Below, piece after piece: positions 1 through 44,295 of a stretch of 50,971 nt of DNA. Origin of the DNA: Octopus sinensis (lineage: Eukaryota); contig NW_021834363.1 in assembly GCF_006345805.1 (NCBI RefSeq), positions 1-50,971 of the forward strand, given 5' to 3'. The translations under genes were made by a program, and so were the position numbers. The notes under the pieces are model-generated. The model saw nothing but the letters and a program-made list of their open reading frames with translations. It was not told the DNA's origin and did no database searches. How positions within the stretch are numbered: the stretch's first letter is position 1; every line of letters starts with the position of its first letter.

Positions 1-526
1 ACAAGTTTTCAAATCACATGCAATTTCATATTTACGATAGCTGCTACAATTCTTACTGAACCTGATAATGTCAGTGACGTATGGTGTGTTGCCATGTTTT
101 TTGTGTATACCGTTGCCAATTGTGAACGCCATCATAAAGCAGTATAACTCAATAATAGTTCAGTCTATAAAACTCACCAAAACTGTTTGTCCAAGTTTGG
201 TTCAGTCAAGCTATGGAGAGGAATTCATAAACGCTAAGCTGTTCAAGACAATTGTTAACAATCATTTTCCATTGAGATACGAGATTGGTAAATCCATTAT
301 AAAACTGTTTCTAATCGTATCTTTTTTCTTTGCTTGCAACAATATAATAAGTCGAGAAGACTTGAACTTATCAGCGTTCACAAGGATTACTTTGATATTG
401 ATGACGTCTATGATACCTAAATTGTTGTCTATAATAAATACAAATCGTAGGTTAACAATAACCATGTTAGATAAAATTATCGAAAGAATTAATGCATATG
501 CCGGAGACGTTAATCCAGTTATTTGA
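1..526 (+). pseudogene. 3' part of a paralog of the 740-aa multipass membrane protein; +1 frameshift near 116-118; 5' part lies outside the window
   Basis: Frame 1 from base 1 reads TSFQITCNFIFTIAATILTEPDNVSDVWCVAMFFVYTVA, aligning to VSFNILCEYVFSIAVAVLAKPDTVGDIWFVSMFLLYGIA of ORF 33909-36131. Frame 2 then continues IVNAIIKQY...HFPLRYEIGKSIIKLFLIVSFFFACNNIISREDLNLSAF...VNPVI*. The frameshift could be a sequencing indel. Confidence 0.8.
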
Positions 527-590
527 TATTCTTTAATAAGATTAAAGGTACTTCAGGGTCTTTTATGGATTATTAACTACAGTGTATAAT

Positions 591-639
591 ATAATAATGA
601 TGATGATGATGATGATGATGATAATAATAATAAAATAAT

Positions 640-720
<81 letters not shown>
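591..720 (+). repeat. (AAT)n/(GAT)n microsatellite, start of retroelement train 1
   Basis: Direct reading; begins about 65 bp after the stop codon at 524-526. Confidence 0.95.
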
Positions 721-722
<2 letters not shown>

Positions 723-14048: not shown

Positions 14049-14700
14049 GGCTTATATTACATTATATTATACTATATTATATTATATTATGTTATATTAT
14101 TATATTATATTATTATATTATATTATATTATATTATATTATATTATATTATATTATTATATTATATTATATTATACTATATTATATTATATTATATTATA
14201 TTTTATATTATATATTATATTATATTATATTATATTATATTATATTACATTATATTATACTATATTATATTATATTATATTATTATATTATATTATACTA
14301 TATTATATTATATTATATTATATTATATTATATTATTATATTATATTACATTATATTATACTATATTATATTATATATATTATTATATTATATTATATTA
14401 TATTATATTATATTATATTATATTACATTATATTATACTATATTATATTATATATATTATATATTATATTATACTATATTATATTATATTATATTATATA
14501 TATTATATTATTATATTATATTACATTATATTATACTATATTATATTATATTATATATTATATTATATTACATTATATTACACTATATTATATTATATTA
14601 TTATATTATATATTATATTATATTATATTATATTAGATTAGATTAGATTAGATTATATCATATATATATATATATATATATATTATATTATATATATATT

Positions 14701-14754
<54 letters not shown>

Positions 14755-33874: not shown

Positions 33875-33898
33875 CTCTGTTTTTTCATATTTTTACAG
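33875..33898 (+). promoter_or_regulatory. Putative 3' splice acceptor of a 5'-UTR intron, 10 nt before the ATG
   Basis: Polypyrimidine tract ctctgttttttcatatttttacAG then ataaccaaatATGG (A at -3, G at +4). Confidence 0.6.
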
Positions 33899-33908
33899 AT
33901 AACCAAAT

Positions 33909-36131
33909 ATGGCTGCCGTGCAGACGACAACAACAGCGACCAGTTCTCTTATTCTTTCAATCATTCTTATTATCACACTGACATCACTAAACATCTCTGC
34001 GAAGGAACTCGGCAATGATTGTGAAGTTAAAATCCCTCCCAATATCGGTGAGATTTTATCTCGTTTAGTGAAATTAGAAAAAGAGGTTTTCAATTTTGAA
34101 GTCCATTTATCAAACAAGACACTTGATGAACTTCTTAATCCTGTGCCATTGGATTATTTTGCAAATGCGAGGAGTTTTACGTGGATTCCAGATAAATCAG
34201 GCGCTTTAACTCTATATAAAACTTTCCCCTATGATTTTTCAATGCATACTTTTAATATGTTGGACGTCTACGTTGCTAAACAAAGGATTGATATCAATAT
34301 CACTTGTGGAAAACAAAATATTCAGAGACACGATTTAATATATTTGATATTCCATGCATTGAAAAGAATCATATTTATGGACAAATTGCAAATGGCAGAA
34401 TCTGGATACATGTGTTTTTATATAAATTTGTCTCAAGACATGAAGAAGAACAGCCCTGGCACATTTGAAGCTCACAAAAGAATTGGTAATAATCGAGAAC
34501 TGTTGAAGAACTATTGCTGTAAACTCTATAAAAATGGAAGCTATTTTTATCACTCCAAATCTATTTGTTCAGGAAAAATTATTGAGAATGCTATGTTTCA
34601 GAATTTAGCACGTATCGCCGGAGCCGTTTTGTGGGCTATATTACCATTACTCATTAGTTTCGTATCAAAAGCGAAAGTACCTTCACATTCCCGTCAACTC
34701 AATCTGCCACTGTTTGCTCACGATGAATTCATATTTACAATTAAAAACACATTACCATACAAATCCGAGTGGATCAATGTAAAACATAATATTTACACAT
34801 TCTCACATTTTCTGTCTTGGGTATTTTGTTTCCACAATTCCTCTTTCTTTGCCTCAAGACTAAGAAGATTCCTTTGTATTCTATTTTCACTTTCAGTACT
34901 CTTTCTGGATCTTTTGATGCATTACTTCTTTTTATATGAAACAATAGAAATTCTTTACCAAGATGGTATCCCATTGGGCTATCGCGCCCTAATATTAGGA
35001 ATAACAGAAAGTTATGATAATACAGATGGCTTCTTGGGGGGTCCGTTTTTGTGGTTCACGGTCTACATATTTTTTAGCTTTATTCTCTTTGTTCTTCCCA
35101 GTCGAACAAGTGAGACTATCGCTTATAATACATTACATCAAAGATCCACTTTCACGTTTCTTATTCAAAATAAGAGATTATTAGAGAAGTATGGCAGTTT
35201 AAATGTTTCTACACAACAGGATTATGATCTACTCTATGCAATAATGAAAGCTAATGTTTCTACTGCTTTAAACTCAAATTTCTGGATTTTAATAATGTAT
35301 ACTTGGTTCAAACGTATAAAGAAAATTTGGTTATATTACTACAGGAGAAATATTTTCTGGCAATTCATTGCGCTTTGGCTCTTTATTTCCATTACAATTT
35401 TATTTGCTGTATTTTCTGTCTGTGAATTATTTCTATGCCTCGTTTATTATGGAATCCCATTTGTTTATCTGATTTTAACTTTACCATTAAGTTATTTCAG
35501 AGTTTATATTTTCCCCCTGTATTTGAATCCTAACTATATTTTCAAGATTATTGCTTTCATTTTAACATTCATATCGTTTCTATGTTTTATAGTATGGGGA
35601 ATTTATTCAATCTATATATTTGCAGTAAGTTTTAATATCCTTTGCGAGTATGTATTTTCAATAGCTGTTGCAGTACTTGCTAAGCCTGATACTGTTGGTG
35701 ATATATGGTTTGTTTCCATGTTTCTTCTCTATGGTATTGCAATCATAAAAGCTATCCAGAAACAGTATGACTTCATTCTGCTTGAATCCATAAAGCTCGC
35801 CAAAACTCTTCGTCCAAATTTAGTTCAGTCAAAATATGGGGAAGAATTCATGGATGCCAGTGTGTTCAAGACAATTATTTACCATCATTTTCCATTGAGA
35901 TACGAAATTGGTAAATCCATTGTAAAATTGTTTCTAATCGTAACCTTTTTCTTTGCTTGCAACAATATAATAAGTCGAGAAGACTTGAACTTATCAGCAT
36001 TCACAAAGATTACTTTGATATTGATGACGTCTATGATACCTAAATTTTTGTCTATAGTAAATGCAGATCGTAGGTTAACAATAACCATGTTAGATAAAAT
36101 GATCCAAACAATAAACTTATTTGAAGAATGA
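33909..36131 (+). CDS. Uncharacterised 740-aa multipass membrane protein: signal peptide, ~200-aa ectodomain with 6 Cys, about 9-11 hydrophobic segments; single coding exon
   Basis: 2.2-kb uninterrupted non-repetitive ORF in TE-riddled DNA; signal-like LILSIILIITLTSLNISA; sequons NKT, NIT, NLS and NGS before the first TM; paralog at 1-526. No TE motifs; family not recognised. Confidence 0.9.
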   Translation: MAAVQTTTTATSSLILSIILIITLTSLNISAKELGNDCEVKIPPNIGEILSRLVKLEKEVFNFEVHLSNKTLDELLNPVPLDYFANARSFTWIPDKSGALTLYKTFPYDFSMHTFNMLDVYVAKQRIDINITCGKQNIQRHDLIYLIFHALKRIIFMDKLQMAESGYMCFYINLSQDMKKNSPGTFEAHKRIGNNRELLKNYCCKLYKNGSYFYHSKSICSGKIIENAMFQNLARIAGAVLWAILPLLISFVSKAKVPSHSRQLNLPLFAHDEFIFTIKNTLPYKSEWINVKHNIYTFSHFLSWVFCFHNSSFFASRLRRFLCILFSLSVLFLDLLMHYFFLYETIEILYQDGIPLGYRALILGITESYDNTDGFLGGPFLWFTVYIFFSFILFVLPSRTSETIAYNTLHQRSTFTFLIQNKRLLEKYGSLNVSTQQDYDLLYAIMKANVSTALNSNFWILIMYTWFKRIKKIWLYYYRRNIFWQFIALWLFISITILFAVFSVCELFLCLVYYGIPFVYLILTLPLSYFRVYIFPLYLNPNYIFKIIAFILTFISFLCFIVWGIYSIYIFAVSFNILCEYVFSIAVAVLAKPDTVGDIWFVSMFLLYGIAIIKAIQKQYDFILLESIKLAKTLRPNLVQSKYGEEFMDASVFKTIIYHHFPLRYEIGKSIVKLFLIVTFFFACNNIISREDLNLSAFTKITLILMTSMIPKFLSIVNADRRLTITMLDKMIQTINLFEE

Positions 36132-36229
36132 AATACATCACGCAGAAGTTTATCAAGTTATTTGATATTCTTCGATACGATGAAAAGTACATAAGTGTGC
36201 TTTATGGATTATTCACTACACTGTATAAC

Positions 36230-36266
<37 letters not shown>

Positions 36267-36274
36267 TAATAATA

Positions 36275-36306
<32 letters not shown>

Positions 36307-36311
36307 TAATA

Positions 36312-36342
<31 letters not shown>

Positions 36343-36348
36343 TAATAT

Positions 36349-36405
<57 letters not shown>

Positions 36406-36420
36406 TATAATAATAATAAT
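36230..36420 (+). repeat. (AAT)n microsatellite, start of retroelement train 2
   Basis: Direct reading. Confidence 0.95.
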
Positions 36421-39056
36421 AGGGAAGGAGAAAGTAACCGTTAAAGACCCCCCTCCCATGGAAGAAGTTCAAAACTTTTGGGAAAGGATTTGGAGTGACT
36501 AGAAGACGTACAACATAAATGCAGACTGGATTATACAAACAGAAGGATCCTACCAAAATTTACAACAACAAGCATGGGAAGGCATCACAATAGCAGACCT
36601 AAGAAAGGCACTCACGAAGGCCCATAATTGGAAATCCCCCGGTAAAGATAGGGTGCCGAATTTCTGGCTCTCATCGCTCCCATGCGCACACGGTTAGCTA
36701 ATTCAGCTGCTCGATGGAATTATGAGAGATCCAAAGAAAACACCTGAATGGTTAGCAAGTGGTATTACCTACCTACTCCCAAAGAATAACGAAACCAAAC
36801 TTCCAAAAAACTATCGGCCTAAAACCTGTCTATCCACCACGTATAAAATCCTAACATCTATCCTGGCGGAGAAAACATATGCATTCATGGAGAAGAACGA
36901 TATTTTCCCCATTGAACAAAAAGGGTGCCGCCGAGGCTCTTACGGATGCAAAGATCAACTGCTAATCAATCGTATGATCCTTGAGAACTGTCACAACAAG
37001 CGCAGAAATCTCAGCTCCGCATGGATTGACTATAAAAAGGCCTTCGATAGTATACCGCATTCATGGATCTTGAAATCGCTGGACATCTTCAAAATTTCCC
37101 CAGTGATTTCAAGCTTCCTGGAGCACAATATGTCGTTGCAGAATACGAATCTCCAATTATACCACTCTAATGGAGTACTTGCTTCAGAGAATATAAACAT
37201 CAACTGTGGAATTTTTCAAGGTGACTCACTTTCACCTCTAATATTCTGCATAGCCCTAATACCCCTTACACGTGAATTAAACAGAACAGGGTATGGGTAT
37301 AAAATTGTCAATAAAAAAATAAGCCATCTATTTTATATGGATGACTTAAAACTCTATGGTAAAGACGATAATGAACTTGAAGGCATATTGCGCACTGTGA
37401 AAGCATTCAGTGATGACATCGGGATGGAGTTTGGGCTTGAGAAGTGTGCCAAGGCCACTTTCCAGTAAGGGAAAGTGAAGACTACAAATTCAGTCGTGTT
37501 AGATGTTGACACAGTCATAAGAGAGCTTGAGCAAGAACAAACATACAAATATTTAGGGATAAATGAAGGCTCTATTATTCAGCATGCAAGCATGAAAGAG
37601 AAGATCAGGAAGGAATGTTATAGGAGAGTTCGAGCAGTCCTGAAATCAAACTAAATGCACGTAACAAGGTGTTAGCTATAAATTCCTTAGCAGTTCCAGT
37701 TGTTACTTATAGCTACAATGTGTTGAACTGGAATATGAGTGAAGTAAAGAATATAGATAGGAAAATACGCAAGCTGCTGAGTTGTAATAGGATGCACCAC
37801 CCAAAGGCATATGTAGATCGCCTTTACCTCCCCAGAGCCCAAGGATGTCGAGGCCTGATCCAATTTGAACTAGCTTACAAAACAACCACAATTGGACTGG
37901 CCAAATATCTTGAAATAACGAATGACTGGATGCTAAAGCTCGTGGAAAATCACGAGAGACGAAAGAAGCTTCATTCTATCATAAAGGAAAGCAAAACATT
38001 TGCTATTGATCTCGTGCAAGATACCCAAACTGAACAACCCGAGGGAAGTACGGCAACTATTGTTTCAAAGAAGGTGAAAATAATGACAACGAAAAAAGCG
38101 CACGAGCAATTGGCTGATAGGTGGGAGGAGAAACCTCTGCACGGCAAATATGTGGTCCGTAGCAAACAAGCTGATGTTGACCAGAAGCAAACCCATCAGT
38201 GGCTACGGAGCTCAGGGCTAAAAGCAGAGAGCGAAGGTTTCATCCTGGCTGCTCAAGATCAAAGCCTATTAACTCGGAACTACCAGGCCAATGTGATGAA
38301 AAATGGAGCAGACCCAAAATGCCGATTCTGCAACGACATGATTGAAACAGTGGGCCACCTAATCTCTGGATGTAAAGTCTTAGCACTAGTGGAGTATAAA
38401 TTAAGACGTGACAGAGTTGGCCAATATCTACACTGGCTAATAAGTCGGCATTACAATATCAAAACTGCCGACAAGTGGTATAATCACCACCCTGAGGCTG
38501 TAACTGAAGGAGAAAATGTAACCATTCTGTGGGACATTCCAGTACATACAGACCGAAACATCAAAGCCAATAAACCAGATATTGTTGTGAAAGACCAAAA
38601 CAATAAAGTTTGCTTATTGATCGACATGAGCATCCCCTTTGATCATAATATCTCGGTGGAAGAATTTGACAAGCTCAGAAAATATAAAGACCTGCTCATT
38701 GAAATTGAGAAAATGTGGCATCTCAAGGCGGTTACAATACCAGTGATCGTAGGAGCACTAGGAATGATCAAGAAGGGAACCGAAAATTATATGAGAATGA
38801 TCCCTGGCTTACCATCCCTGCAAGAAGTGCAAAAGATTGTCTTAACTGGTACATCACACGTATTGAGAAGAGCATTGTCGATGTGAGAACTATTACTACC
38901 CATGTATTTTAATTTAACTTTATTCTATAAAAAAAAATGAACGAACTATTGAGTTTGGTTTAATGGCCTACCAATGTATACTATGAGTTTCTTTGCCCTA
39001 GGATTCGGGAAGACACTCGGCAAGAAATAGAAGCAAATTTGAAAGAAGAAAAACCC
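36421..39056 (+). mobile_element. 5'-truncated R4/Dong element, subfamily A, closely related to 14979-18950
   Basis: RT (YMDD), CRFC...HLISGC and KPDIVV/LIDMSIP. Stops at 36500, about 36696 and 37466; 1-nt deletion near 37650; AAT on both sides. Confidence 0.95.
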
Positions 39057-39985: not shown

Positions 39986-40045
<60 letters not shown>

Positions 40046-40047
<2 letters not shown>

Positions 40048-40197
40048 TGCACTACTAGGCACTTGCACACATCCTACGCAGAACACTTTCCATACAATAA
40101 CCATCAGAGCATCACAACAAATCACAGCACATACCCAAGGCACACAGAGCTGCGCTCGGTAGTGAAGTGAAAGCACGCTATAAAAATAAAACTACTG
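40046..40197 (+). mobile_element. ~150-bp 3' stub of R4/Dong subfamily B
   Basis: Repeats the last codons and 3' UTR of 39743-39894; AAT-flanked. Confidence 0.9.
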
Positions 40198-40303
40198 AAT
40201 AATAATAATAATAATATAATATAATAATAATAATATAATAATAATAATAATAATATAATAATAATAATAATATAATAATAATAATAATAATAATATAATA
40301 ATA

Positions 40304-40362
<59 letters not shown>

Positions 40363-40454
40363 GTAATGATAATAATAATAATAATGATAATGATAATAAT
40401 AATAATAATATAATAATAATAATAATATAATAGTAATAATGATAATAATAATAA
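40198..40454 (+). repeat. (AAT)n microsatellite, end of train 2
   Basis: Direct reading; followed by the conserved flank at 40455-40490. Confidence 0.95.
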
Positions 40455-40516
40455 TGGTTCTGGGCATTCTCACAGTCACAAACACACTCATGTATCTCCT
40501 ATACATAAATACATAC

Positions 40517-40551
<35 letters not shown>

Positions 40552-40578
40552 CATACATATATATATATATATATAATT

Positions 40579-40615
<37 letters not shown>

Positions 40616-40624
<9 letters not shown>

Positions 40625-40780
40625 TACATTAAAAGGCTTCTAAAGGAAGAAGTGAGTACTAGATACACAAAAGTTGGATAAATTCAGTGAAATGAAAATT
40701 ACATTTCACTGAATTTATCCAACTTTTGTGTATCTAGTACTCACTTCTTCCTTTAGAAGCCTTTTAATGTACTTATATAT
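40616..40780. repeat. Perfect inverted repeat: 79-bp arms, 7-nt spacer
   Basis: 40616-40694 is the exact reverse complement of 40702-40780 by hand check. Confidence 0.95.
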
Positions 40781-40858
40781 GAATAACATATAGCCTATGG
40801 CTAAAATGTCTTTTGTGCTAGATCACCGGCGATAATAATTTTTTTATCGCATTTTGAC

Positions 40859-44295
<3,437 letters not shown>

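What the first reader, a model, noticed from the sequence alone, without database searches (positions are those of the whole stretch)
33909..36131. Unassigned intronless receptor/channel-like membrane protein present as a tandem gene family
Seen: intact 740-aa ORF with a signal peptide, an ~200-aa ectodomain (6 Cys, 4 N-glycosylation sequons), one TM, a loop, and then a dense multi-TM region ending in two conserved helices (FPLRYEIGKS..KLFLIV.FFFACNNIISREDLNLSAF..ITLILMTSMIPK). A paralog ends 35.6 kb upstream in the same orientation. I see no GPCR, Cys-loop/chemotactile receptor, TRP, IR or transporter signature. Inference: a single coding exon, tandem duplication, an extracellular domain and a polytopic core are the usual profile of lineage-expanded sensory or immune receptor families, so this may be an undescribed one.
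Basis: partly seen in the sequence, partly recalled or inferred. Interest (0 to 1): 0.8.

Follow-up and report, generated by a model that had tools for sequence, protein, structure and literature searches.

The report
Orphan nine-helix membrane glycoprotein family
This octopus gene is a real, intact member of an unnamed family of large membrane proteins found in molluscs and at least one annelid; it matches no characterised protein family or solved structure, so its job (perhaps a surface receptor, channel or transporter) is still unknown.

Summary
Window 33909-36131 (+) is an intact 740-codon ORF (chance about 6e-25). It encodes an N-terminal signal-like segment, a ~195-aa ectodomain with six cysteines, and nine inferred membrane helices. 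A second copy ends at 526 in the same orientation, but it is frameshifted.

The window is an unplaced Octopus sinensis contig. At least 10 further loci exist in that species; four intact ones lie within 3.6 Mb of one chromosome.

The family is not octopus-specific. A profile search found 149 representative proteins. All 13 named clusters are molluscs (cephalopods, bivalves, gastropods) or the annelid Owenia, and all are "uncharacterized". The single coding exon is shared by a clam, an oyster and the annelid, so it is probably ancestral. A conserved splice acceptor 10 nt before the ATG implies a 5'UTR intron.

There is no Pfam hit. A confident AlphaFold model (pLDDT 86.5, pTM 0.83) has no Foldseek match in PDB or BFVD. 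UniRef's "STRA6" name for two paralogs failed four tests.

Paralog dN/dS is 0.39-0.51, and the ectodomain is not faster than the core.

So this is an undescribed family, but the "sensory/immune receptor" reading is untested and somewhat disfavoured. Function is inferred only.

The parts
33876..33898 (+). Polypyrimidine tract plus CAG: a probable 3' splice site of a 5'UTR intron. The coding exon would start at 33899, 10 nt before the ATG.
   Evidence: The sequence is ctctgttttttcatatttttacag|ATAACCAAATATG. The CAG and the following 10 nt are conserved in all 5 O. sinensis paralogs, while homology to the three more distant paralogs stops there or within about 85 bp upstream. Splicing itself was not shown.
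33909..36131 (+). Complete single-exon CDS, 740 codons plus stop, of a member of the orphan nine-helix glycoprotein family.
   Evidence: It aligns end to end with annotated 731-747 aa octopus proteins. The AF2 model has pLDDT 86.5.
33909..34001 (+). Residues 1-31: N-terminal hydrophobic segment, a probable cleavable signal peptide (..LNISA|KE).
   Evidence: Hydropathy. 77 of 103 family members have a comparable N-terminal hydrophobic segment before the first conserved Cys. Cleavage is inferred, not predicted by a dedicated tool.
34002..34589 (+). Residues 32-227: extracellular or lumenal alpha/beta domain with six conserved Cys and four N-x-S/T sequons.
   Evidence: Across the family C38, C133, C169, C203, C204 and C220 are 83-100% conserved, and W92 is 93% conserved. 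Blocks of 10 residues have mean pLDDT 86-97 over residues 41-210. No PDB or Pfam match.
34590..34667 (+). Residues 228-253: membrane helix 1 (out to in), with P246 98% conserved.
34668..34844 (+). Residues 254-312: variable, low-confidence cytoplasmic linker.
   Evidence: pLDDT is below 50 for residues 260-285. Paralogs differ here by insertions and deletions.
34845..36059 (+). Residues 313-717: membrane helices 2-9 with their loops. These include the conserved extracellular loop IPLG..NTD.F.GGP (352-379), a conserved cytoplasmic helical region (396-481) and a cytoplasmic beta-hairpin (639-649).
   Evidence: AF2 helices. The K+R distribution in loops across 101 sequences gives an N-out/C-in, 9-TM topology.
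35424..35426 (+). Codon for E506: a Glu inside membrane helix 4 (consensus LCVLELLLCLLYYGLP), 94% conserved across the family.
   Evidence: A role in ion or substrate binding is inferred only.
36060..36128 (+). Residues 718-740: basic cytoplasmic tail with a terminal helix.
   Evidence: K+R fraction 0.235.
1..526 (+). 3' end of a second family copy in the same orientation. It is cut by the contig end and frameshifted near 113-117.
36132..36421 (+). 3' flank: about 100 bp shared with the other copy, then an (ATA)n array. Homology between the two copies ends in this array.

Best explanation
The ORF is a functional, vertically inherited host gene of Octopus sinensis.

It belongs to an unnamed protein family found so far only in molluscs and one annelid. 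Family members are ~730-860 aa and are encoded by a single coding exon.

The protein has a signal peptide, a ~195-aa disulfide-bonded and N-glycosylated alpha/beta domain facing the outside (or the lumen), and nine membrane helices with the N-terminus out and the C-terminus in. The cytoplasmic loops are long and partly conserved. One Glu inside helix 4 is nearly invariant.

Octopods carry about a dozen copies, made by DNA-level duplication and probably partly homogenised by gene conversion.

Most likely working model (inferred, not shown): the conserved ectodomain and extracellular loop 2 bind a conserved extracellular or lumenal ligand, and the nine-helix core moves a small solute or ion, or passes on the signal, with E506 at the functional centre.

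The identity, architecture, distribution and selective constraint are shown. The surface location, the ligand and the channel/transporter activity are inferred.
For: - The ORF is intact and far beyond chance.
- The window is contig VCDQ01000048.1 of assembly GCA_006345805.1, the assembly that carries the named O. sinensis paralogs.
- There are 21 close homologues in octopods, with at least 10 LOC ids in O. sinensis. Four intact single-exon paralogs lie at 205.04, 205.13, 205.34 and 208.61 Mb of CM016859.1, and a further fragment lies 9 kb from one of them.
- The profile search found 149 representatives at E<=1e-3, mostly full-length. Named ones come from Ostrea, Mercenaria, Mytilus, Mizuhopecten, Haliotis and Owenia.
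- Single-exon CDS also in Mercenaria, Owenia, Ostrea and an unnamed ENA member.
- dN/dS is 0.39-0.51 over all pairs.
- The closest paralog shares 329 bp upstream of the ATG, including the acceptor. This fits DNA-level duplication, not retroposition.
- The AF2 model has pLDDT 86.5 and pTM 0.83.
- Topology follows from hydropathy, AF2 helices and the positive-inside rule.
- Conserved residues are six ectodomain Cys, prolines at the helix turns, R317/R320/R469, E506 and Y608/Y620, with no conserved His and no catalytic-type motif.
- No internal repeat.
- No match to any Pfam family, PDB sequence or PDB/BFVD fold.
Against: - No expression data could be consulted.
- The Ostrea Logan contigs are collinear with the genome, so they do not prove transcription.
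- No dedicated signal-peptide or TM predictor was available, so the 49-residue 'helix 6' could in principle be a hairpin. The K+R distribution argues against that.
- No oligomer model or coordinates were available, so no pore or cavity was seen.
- An ectodomain conserved across the two phyla, with moderate omega, would also fit an intracellular trafficking or biogenesis role.
- UniProt's automatic STRA6 name for two paralogs implies that some signature (probably PANTHER) weakly matches. I could not examine it.
Confidence: 0.6

Rival explanations
1. It is a divergent STRA6-type retinol-uptake receptor, as UniRef names two O. bimaculoides paralogs.
For: - UniRef names P0005 and P0006 'Receptor for retinol uptake STRA6'.
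- STRA6 is also a nine-helix, N-out/C-in protein (established knowledge of the zebrafish structure 5SY1), which matches the topology inferred here.
Against: - PF14752 (RBP_receptor) hits none of 23 family members or the family consensus at E<=10. The same library gives 869 bits for human STRA6.
- The 111-sequence family profile does not find 5sy1_A among PDB sequences at E<=10, although that chain is in the library.
- hhalign of the family against human STRA6 and against 18 mammalian STRA6 gives probabilities of 0.15% and 0.16%.
- Foldseek of the confident model against PDB lists no STRA6 chain among the 50 best of 57 matches; the best is E=1.9.
- STRA6 and its ligand RBP4 are reported absent from the annelid Platynereis (PMC5821490).
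- STRA6 has no signal peptide plus 200-aa Cys-rich ectodomain (established knowledge).
Confidence: 0.04
2. The ORF belongs to, or derives from, a mobile element or endogenous virus (for example an envelope-like membrane protein). That would explain the single exon, the many copies and the LINE sequences next to it.
For: - Both copies in the window are followed, about 100 bp after the stop, by (ATA)n and then by reverse-transcriptase fragments in the same orientation.
- The coding sequence is a single exon in every species examined.
Against: - The two LINE fragments are truncated at different points and are unrelated at their junctions.
- No reverse transcriptase, integrase or other gene was called within 3-10 kb of the paralogs/orthologs looked up in L002-L007; near L008 only short ORFs, one with a weak UBA hit.
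- Homology between the more distant paralogs is confined to the CDS plus a conserved splice acceptor.
- Sequence similarity groups by host clade: cephalopods, two bivalve groups and an Owenia group.
- omega is about 0.4-0.5.
- No match in BFVD viral structures.
Confidence: 0.05
3. It is a secretory-pathway housekeeping-type factor (a cargo receptor, or a lipid/glycan handling or biogenesis protein). It would resemble nonaspanins, Wntless or SID-1 in architecture and would not be a cell-surface sensory or immune receptor or channel.
For: - The ectodomain is conserved across the two phyla and evolves no faster than the core.
- The layout 'signal peptide + ~200-aa lumenal domain + nine helices' is that of TM9SF proteins (established knowledge).
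Against: - No hit to EMP70, Wntless, SID-1 or GOLD-7TM Pfam models.
- The family is restricted to molluscs and annelids and is multi-copy with pseudogenised members. That is unusual for core machinery.
- No conserved catalytic-type residues.
Confidence: 0.25
4. The ORF is a recently dead or never-functional duplicate that happens to be still open.
For: - The neighbouring copy is frameshifted.
- Several annotated paralogs are truncated, at 437-629 aa.
- The contig is unplaced and full of repeats.
Against: - 740 open codons in 34% G+C DNA.
- dN/dS is 0.41-0.51 against every other paralog.
- All family-wide conserved residues are retained except a few ectodomain positions.
- A 98%-identical protein is annotated in O. 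vulgaris (P0002), so the locus probably pre-dates the split of the two species, or is allelic to such a locus, without decay.
Confidence: 0.06

Closest known systems
STRA6 / RBP_receptor family (PF14752; zebrafish structure 5SY1)
   Same: Nine membrane helices with the N-terminus outside and the C-terminus inside, and long helices in the second half. Two octopus paralogs carry this name in UniRef.
   Different: No HMM, profile-profile or fold similarity. STRA6 lacks the signal peptide and the Cys-rich 195-aa ectodomain. Outside PF14752-bearing vertebrates its presence is doubtful (PMC5821490).
TM9SF / nonaspanin (EMP70, PF02990)
   Same: The overall layout: signal peptide, a lumenal domain of ~200-280 aa, then nine membrane helices (from established knowledge; a resemblance in architecture only).
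   Different: No EMP70 hit at E<=10 on any member or on the consensus. Nonaspanins are pan-eukaryotic and low-copy, whereas this family has been seen only in molluscs and an annelid and is multi-copy.
Ectodomain-plus-polytopic-core carriers and receptors (Wntless, GOLD-domain 7TM proteins, SID-1/SIDT)
   Same: An N-terminal folded extracellular or lumenal domain placed directly before a multi-helix core, which in those families binds a ligand that the core then handles.
   Different: No sequence or fold match. The helix number differs (7-8 or 11 against 9). The ectodomain here is alpha/beta with three probable disulfides, not a GOLD or beta-sandwich domain according to the model's secondary structure.

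Membership tests
STRA6 / RBP_receptor (PF14752) | Significant match to the PF14752 profile | tested here: not met
   No hit at E<=10 for the window protein, 22 other members or the family consensus. As a positive control, human STRA6 scores 869 bits.
STRA6 / RBP_receptor (PF14752) | Profile-profile homology to bona fide STRA6 sequences | tested here: not met
   hhalign gives probability 0.15% against human STRA6 and 0.16% against an 18-sequence mammalian alignment. The STRA6 alignment was shallow (mammals only).
STRA6 / RBP_receptor (PF14752) | Fold similarity to the solved STRA6 structure 5SY1 | tested here: not met
   Foldseek against PDB has a best hit of E=1.9 and lists no STRA6 chain among the 50 best of 57 matches. 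5sy1 is in the PDB sequence copy.
STRA6 / RBP_receptor (PF14752) | Nine helices, N-terminus out, C-terminus in | tested here: met
   Inferred from AF2 helices and K+R loop counts. This is a generic feature and is not sufficient for membership.
STRA6 / RBP_receptor (PF14752) | Binding of retinol-binding protein and calmodulin | not testable with these tools
   Needs biochemistry.
TM9SF / nonaspanin (EMP70, PF02990) | Match to the EMP70 profile | tested here: not met
   No Pfam hit at E<=10.
TM9SF / nonaspanin (EMP70, PF02990) | Signal peptide + lumenal domain + nine helices | tested here: met
   This is architecture only.
Known sensory receptor and channel families (GPCR classes, Cys-loop/chemotactile receptors, TRP, ionotropic glutamate-type, 7TM ion-channel gustatory/odorant type, TMC/OSCA, otopetrin) | Match to the corresponding Pfam profiles or to solved structures of the families | tested here: not met
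   No Pfam hits. The Foldseek hits to TRP channels have E>2 and TM-scores of 0.06-0.10, which is noise.
Mobile-element or viral membrane protein | Constant linkage to element genes or termini, or similarity to viral proteins | tested here: not met
   No reverse transcriptase, integrase or other mobile-element gene was called in the 3-10 kb flanks of seven other loci. The LINE fragments in the window differ. BFVD gives no match. A whole-genome census was not possible.
Unnamed mollusc/annelid nine-helix glycoprotein family (defined here by alignment A3) | Full-length profile match including the six-Cys ectodomain, the GGP motif, E506 and the turn prolines | tested here: met
   The window protein retains C38, C133, C169, C203, C204, C220, P246, R317, R320, G377-G378-P379, P397, F458-W459, R469, E506, P517, P593, Y608, Y620, P662 and P711.

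The most novel reading that the evidence does not exclude
The family is a new membrane-protein fold that works as a ligand-binding channel or transporter specific to molluscs, annelids and perhaps other spiralians. The conserved six-Cys ectodomain would be the ligand sensor and the helix-4 glutamate the ion or substrate site. Octopods would have multiplied it for a lineage-specific sensory, secretory or developmental use.
Probability: 0.25. Interest if true: 0.8.

Novelty: categorically new. Interest (0 to 1): 0.58.

Why it matters
Molluscs and annelids are poorly served by functional annotation. A conserved, multi-copy, ~750-aa membrane glycoprotein family with a confidently predicted fold and no match among solved structures is a concrete candidate for a new class of receptor, channel or transporter.

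It also corrects a misleading automatic name (STRA6). That name would otherwise suggest a vertebrate-type retinol uptake system in cephalopods.

The value is limited by two things. There is no functional or expression evidence. Orphan families of this kind are not rare in these phyla.

Tried and rejected
- Shallow structure model: a 13-sequence (octopod-heavy) alignment gave pLDDT 47.8 and was unusable. It was replaced by a 111-sequence alignment.
- STRA6 lead from UniRef names: rejected after Pfam, PDB-profile, hhalign and Foldseek tests.
- Second word-indexed search with the wide alignment: it returned only the same close relatives.
- Family consensus and ectodomain consensus against Pfam and PDB: nothing.
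- Internal repeat, as in many transporters: none by hhalign self-comparison.
- Retrocopy origin: not supported. The closest paralog shares 329 bp upstream including the acceptor, and the single exon is family-wide.
- RNA structure as the cause of the low synonymous divergence in codons 401-460: z=-1.3 against -0.98 for a control, so not supported.
- Transcript evidence from Logan contigs of the Ostrea ortholog: the contigs are collinear with the genome and therefore uninformative.
- Literature searches by LOC identifiers and by topic: nothing on this family.
- Viral structure library: no match.
Full report
**1. What is in the sequence**

Window 33909-36131 (+) is an uninterrupted ORF of 740 codons starting at ATG. 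The window has about 34% G+C, so a stop is expected about every 14 codons. An open run of this length has a chance of about 6e-25.

The protein begins with an uncharged, hydrophobic segment (residues ~10-27, ending ..LNISA|KE). A region of about 195 residues follows. It has Cys at 38, 133, 169, 203, 204 and 220, and sequons at N69, N130, N173 and N209. A hydrophobic helix lies at 228-253, then a variable linker, then a dense set of hydrophobic helices up to residue 717.

Its stop is 35,605 bp upstream of the main copy's stop. It is not intact in the part we can see. Frame 1 reads ...AMFFVYTVANCERHHKAV* and the homologous reading resumes in frame 2, because of one extra base near 113-117.

**2. 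Where it comes from and how many copies exist**

The exact protein is on record once, on the 50,971-bp GenBank contig VCDQ01000048.1 of assembly GCA_006345805.1. That contig is the whole window. The same assembly carries the proteins that NCBI names Octopus sinensis.

The word-indexed protein search found 21 relatives. These include at least ten O. sinensis LOC ids, several O. bimaculoides and O. vulgaris proteins (one 98% identical, P0002), one from Argonauta, and two unnamed ENA proteins at 34-38% identity.

Four intact O. sinensis paralogs lie on chromosome CM016859.1 at 205.04 (+), 205.13 (+), 205.34 (-) and 208.61 Mb (-). Each is a single-exon CDS. A further fragment lies about 9 kb beyond one of them. 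So the family is multi-copy and loosely clustered, with some truncated or broken members.

**3. The family is old, not octopus-specific**

A profile of 13 cephalopod sequences, run against 1.84 billion representative proteins, found 149 proteins at E<=1e-3 and 61 at E<=1e-30. Most are 750-860 aa and match over the full length, ectodomain included.

Of 30 clusters looked up, 13 carry names. The ten non-octopus ones are 'uncharacterized' proteins of bivalves (Ostrea, Mercenaria, Mytilus, Mizuhopecten), gastropods (Haliotis) and the annelid Owenia fusiformis. Similarity groups follow host clades. No named member came from outside molluscs and annelids; the taxa of the 17 unnamed clusters are unknown.

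The CDS is also a single exon in Mercenaria, Owenia, Ostrea and an unnamed ENA relative. This feature is therefore probably ancestral to the family.

In octopus, a polypyrimidine tract plus CAG ends 10 nt before the ATG. It is invariant in five paralogs, even where the upstream DNA is unrelated. This indicates a non-coding upstream exon. The closest paralog shares 329 bp upstream, including that acceptor. That fits DNA-level duplication and not retroposition.

**4. Constraint**

Nei-Gojobori dN/dS between the five intact O. sinensis copies is 0.39-0.51. It is 0.25-0.57 in the ectodomain and 0.37-0.50 in the membrane part. This is purifying selection of moderate strength, with no faster ectodomain.

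**5. Architecture**

With 111 family sequences, AlphaFold2 gave a confident model (mean pLDDT 86.5, pTM 0.83). Only residues 1-8, 28-32 and 260-285 fall below 50.

The ectodomain is alpha/beta. The rest contains helices at 228-253, 313-351, 379-395, 482-515, 517-539, 543-591, 593-634, 663-689 and 697-717. There are also short extracellular helices at 357-371, a cytoplasmic helical region at 400-478, and a beta-hairpin at 639-649.

K+R counts were taken over 101 sequences.
- Rich in K+R: 396-481, 540-542, 618-665 and the tail.
- Poor in K+R: 352-378, the 516 turn, the 590-596 turn and 690-696.

This gives nine membrane passes with the N-terminus out and the C-terminus in, and it treats 543-591 as one pass.

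Most members (77 of 103) have an N-terminal hydrophobic segment before the first conserved Cys.

Positions conserved at >=80% across the family are the six ectodomain Cys, W92, P246, R317, R320, G377-G378-P379, P397, F458-W459, R469, E506 (inside helix 4), P517, P593, Y608, Y620, P662 and P711. There is no conserved His and no catalytic-type motif. There is no internal repeat.

**6. Comparison with what is known**

Pfam gave nothing at E<=10 for the window protein, 22 other members or the consensus sequences. PDB sequences gave nothing with single sequences or with profiles.

Foldseek of the confident model against 350,542 PDB chains gave a best E of 1.9, with TM-scores of 0.05-0.12 and rmsd above 20 Å for almost all listed hits. 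That is noise. BFVD gave the same result.

The only lead to a known family was UniRef's name 'Receptor for retinol uptake STRA6' for two O. bimaculoides paralogs. I tested it as follows.
- A human STRA6 sequence written from memory was validated as bait: 869 bits to PF14752, and E=2.6e-169 to 5sy1_A.
- hhalign of the family against that sequence gave a probability of 0.15%.
- hhalign against an alignment of 18 database STRA6 proteins gave 0.16%.

Together with the Pfam, PDB-profile and Foldseek results, the name is unsupported. A paper on Platynereis reports STRA6 and RBP4 absent from that annelid (PMC5821490).

The nine-helix N-out/C-in topology is shared with STRA6. It is also shared with TM9SF nonaspanins, which in addition have a signal peptide and a lumenal domain. 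This is a resemblance in layout only.

**7. Most likely explanation**

Shown: this is a real, constrained host gene of an unnamed nine-helix glycoprotein family of molluscs and annelids, and it has been multiplied in octopods.

Inferred: the disulfide-bonded, glycosylated ectodomain faces outward and binds a conserved ligand. The core, with its buried and nearly invariant Glu, carries an ion or small solute, or relays the signal.

The conserved ectodomain and its unremarkable dN/dS argue against a rapidly diversifying immune or chemosensory receptor family. An intracellular trafficking or carrier role remains a serious rival. A mobile-element origin, a STRA6 identity and a dead ORF are each unlikely, for the reasons listed under the rival explanations.

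**8. Novelty and verdict**

With the libraries available here (Pfam 2025, PDB 2026, BFVD) the family lies outside every characterised kind. Its members exist in databases only as 'uncharacterized' proteins, or in two cases under a wrong name.

AlphaFold DB, PANTHER and HHpred could not be consulted, and no expression data were available. The claim of a new fold and any function therefore stay provisional.

Interest is moderate to fairly high. It is a good, concrete candidate for a new receptor/channel-like family, but there is no functional evidence yet.

Noticed in passing
window 1-526: The neighbouring family copy is frameshifted. There is one extra base near 113-117, frame 1 runs into a stop after ...CERHHKAV, and homology continues in frame 2. 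It is cut by the contig end, so it is a pseudogene or carries an assembly error.
   Followed up: yes
window 35109-35288 (codons 401-460); also codons 1-60 and 441-500: Synonymous divergence among the five O. sinensis paralogs drops to 0.086 here, against 0.25-0.37 elsewhere. The left partial copy is a mosaic whose best-matching paralog changes along its length. Gene conversion between paralogs is the likeliest cause, and local RNA structure is not unusual (z=-1.3, control -0.98). Constraint linked to cephalopod RNA editing was not tested.
   Followed up: partly
window 586-722 then 780-2158; window 36230-36421 then 36422-38886: Both family copies are followed, about 100 bp after the stop, by an (ATA)n array and then by a 5'-truncated LINE fragment (RVT_1, zf-RVT) in the same orientation. 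The two fragments are truncated at different points. The same (AAT)n repeat occurs at many other places in the window, which suggests a LINE that inserts at or carries (AAT)n tails.
   Followed up: partly
P0005 and P0006 (O. bimaculoides A0A0L8GSN3, A0A0L8GRC4): UniRef names these paralogs 'Receptor for retinol uptake STRA6'. No test here supports that name, so it looks like an automatic mis-annotation that could spread.
   Followed up: yes
P0019 (O. vulgaris, 1010 aa, 'cytoplasmic-like'): This annotated protein joins a fragment of this family (62% identity over 36% of the query) to gelsolin-type Pfam domains (PF00626 and others). It is probably a merged gene model.
   Followed up: no
whole window (VCDQ01000048.1) versus CM016859.1: The window's protein is 98% identical to an O. 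vulgaris protein but only 83% identical to the best O. sinensis protein returned by the search (P0001, on CM016859.1). The locus on this unplaced contig is therefore a distinct paralog apparently missing from the placed chromosome and from the RefSeq protein set.
   Followed up: partly
L003 21071-22001: A further family fragment (74% identity to window codons ~340-670) lies about 9 kb downstream of the P0003 gene. This is another tandem pair.
   Followed up: no
L009, L011-L013 versus L010 4315-8050 (Ostrea edulis): At least ten independent sequencing runs (SRR254450xx) give contigs of 3,731-3,739 bp with the same ends around the oyster ortholog, all collinear with the genome. They may be unspliced full-length transcripts or repeat-bounded genomic contigs. 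The run type could not be looked up.
   Followed up: partly
window 40001-44000 and 14052-14753: There is a 4-kb stretch of only 20-21% G+C packed with (AT)n arrays, and a 700-bp (TTATA)n array that produces spurious 200-aa ORFs.
   Followed up: no
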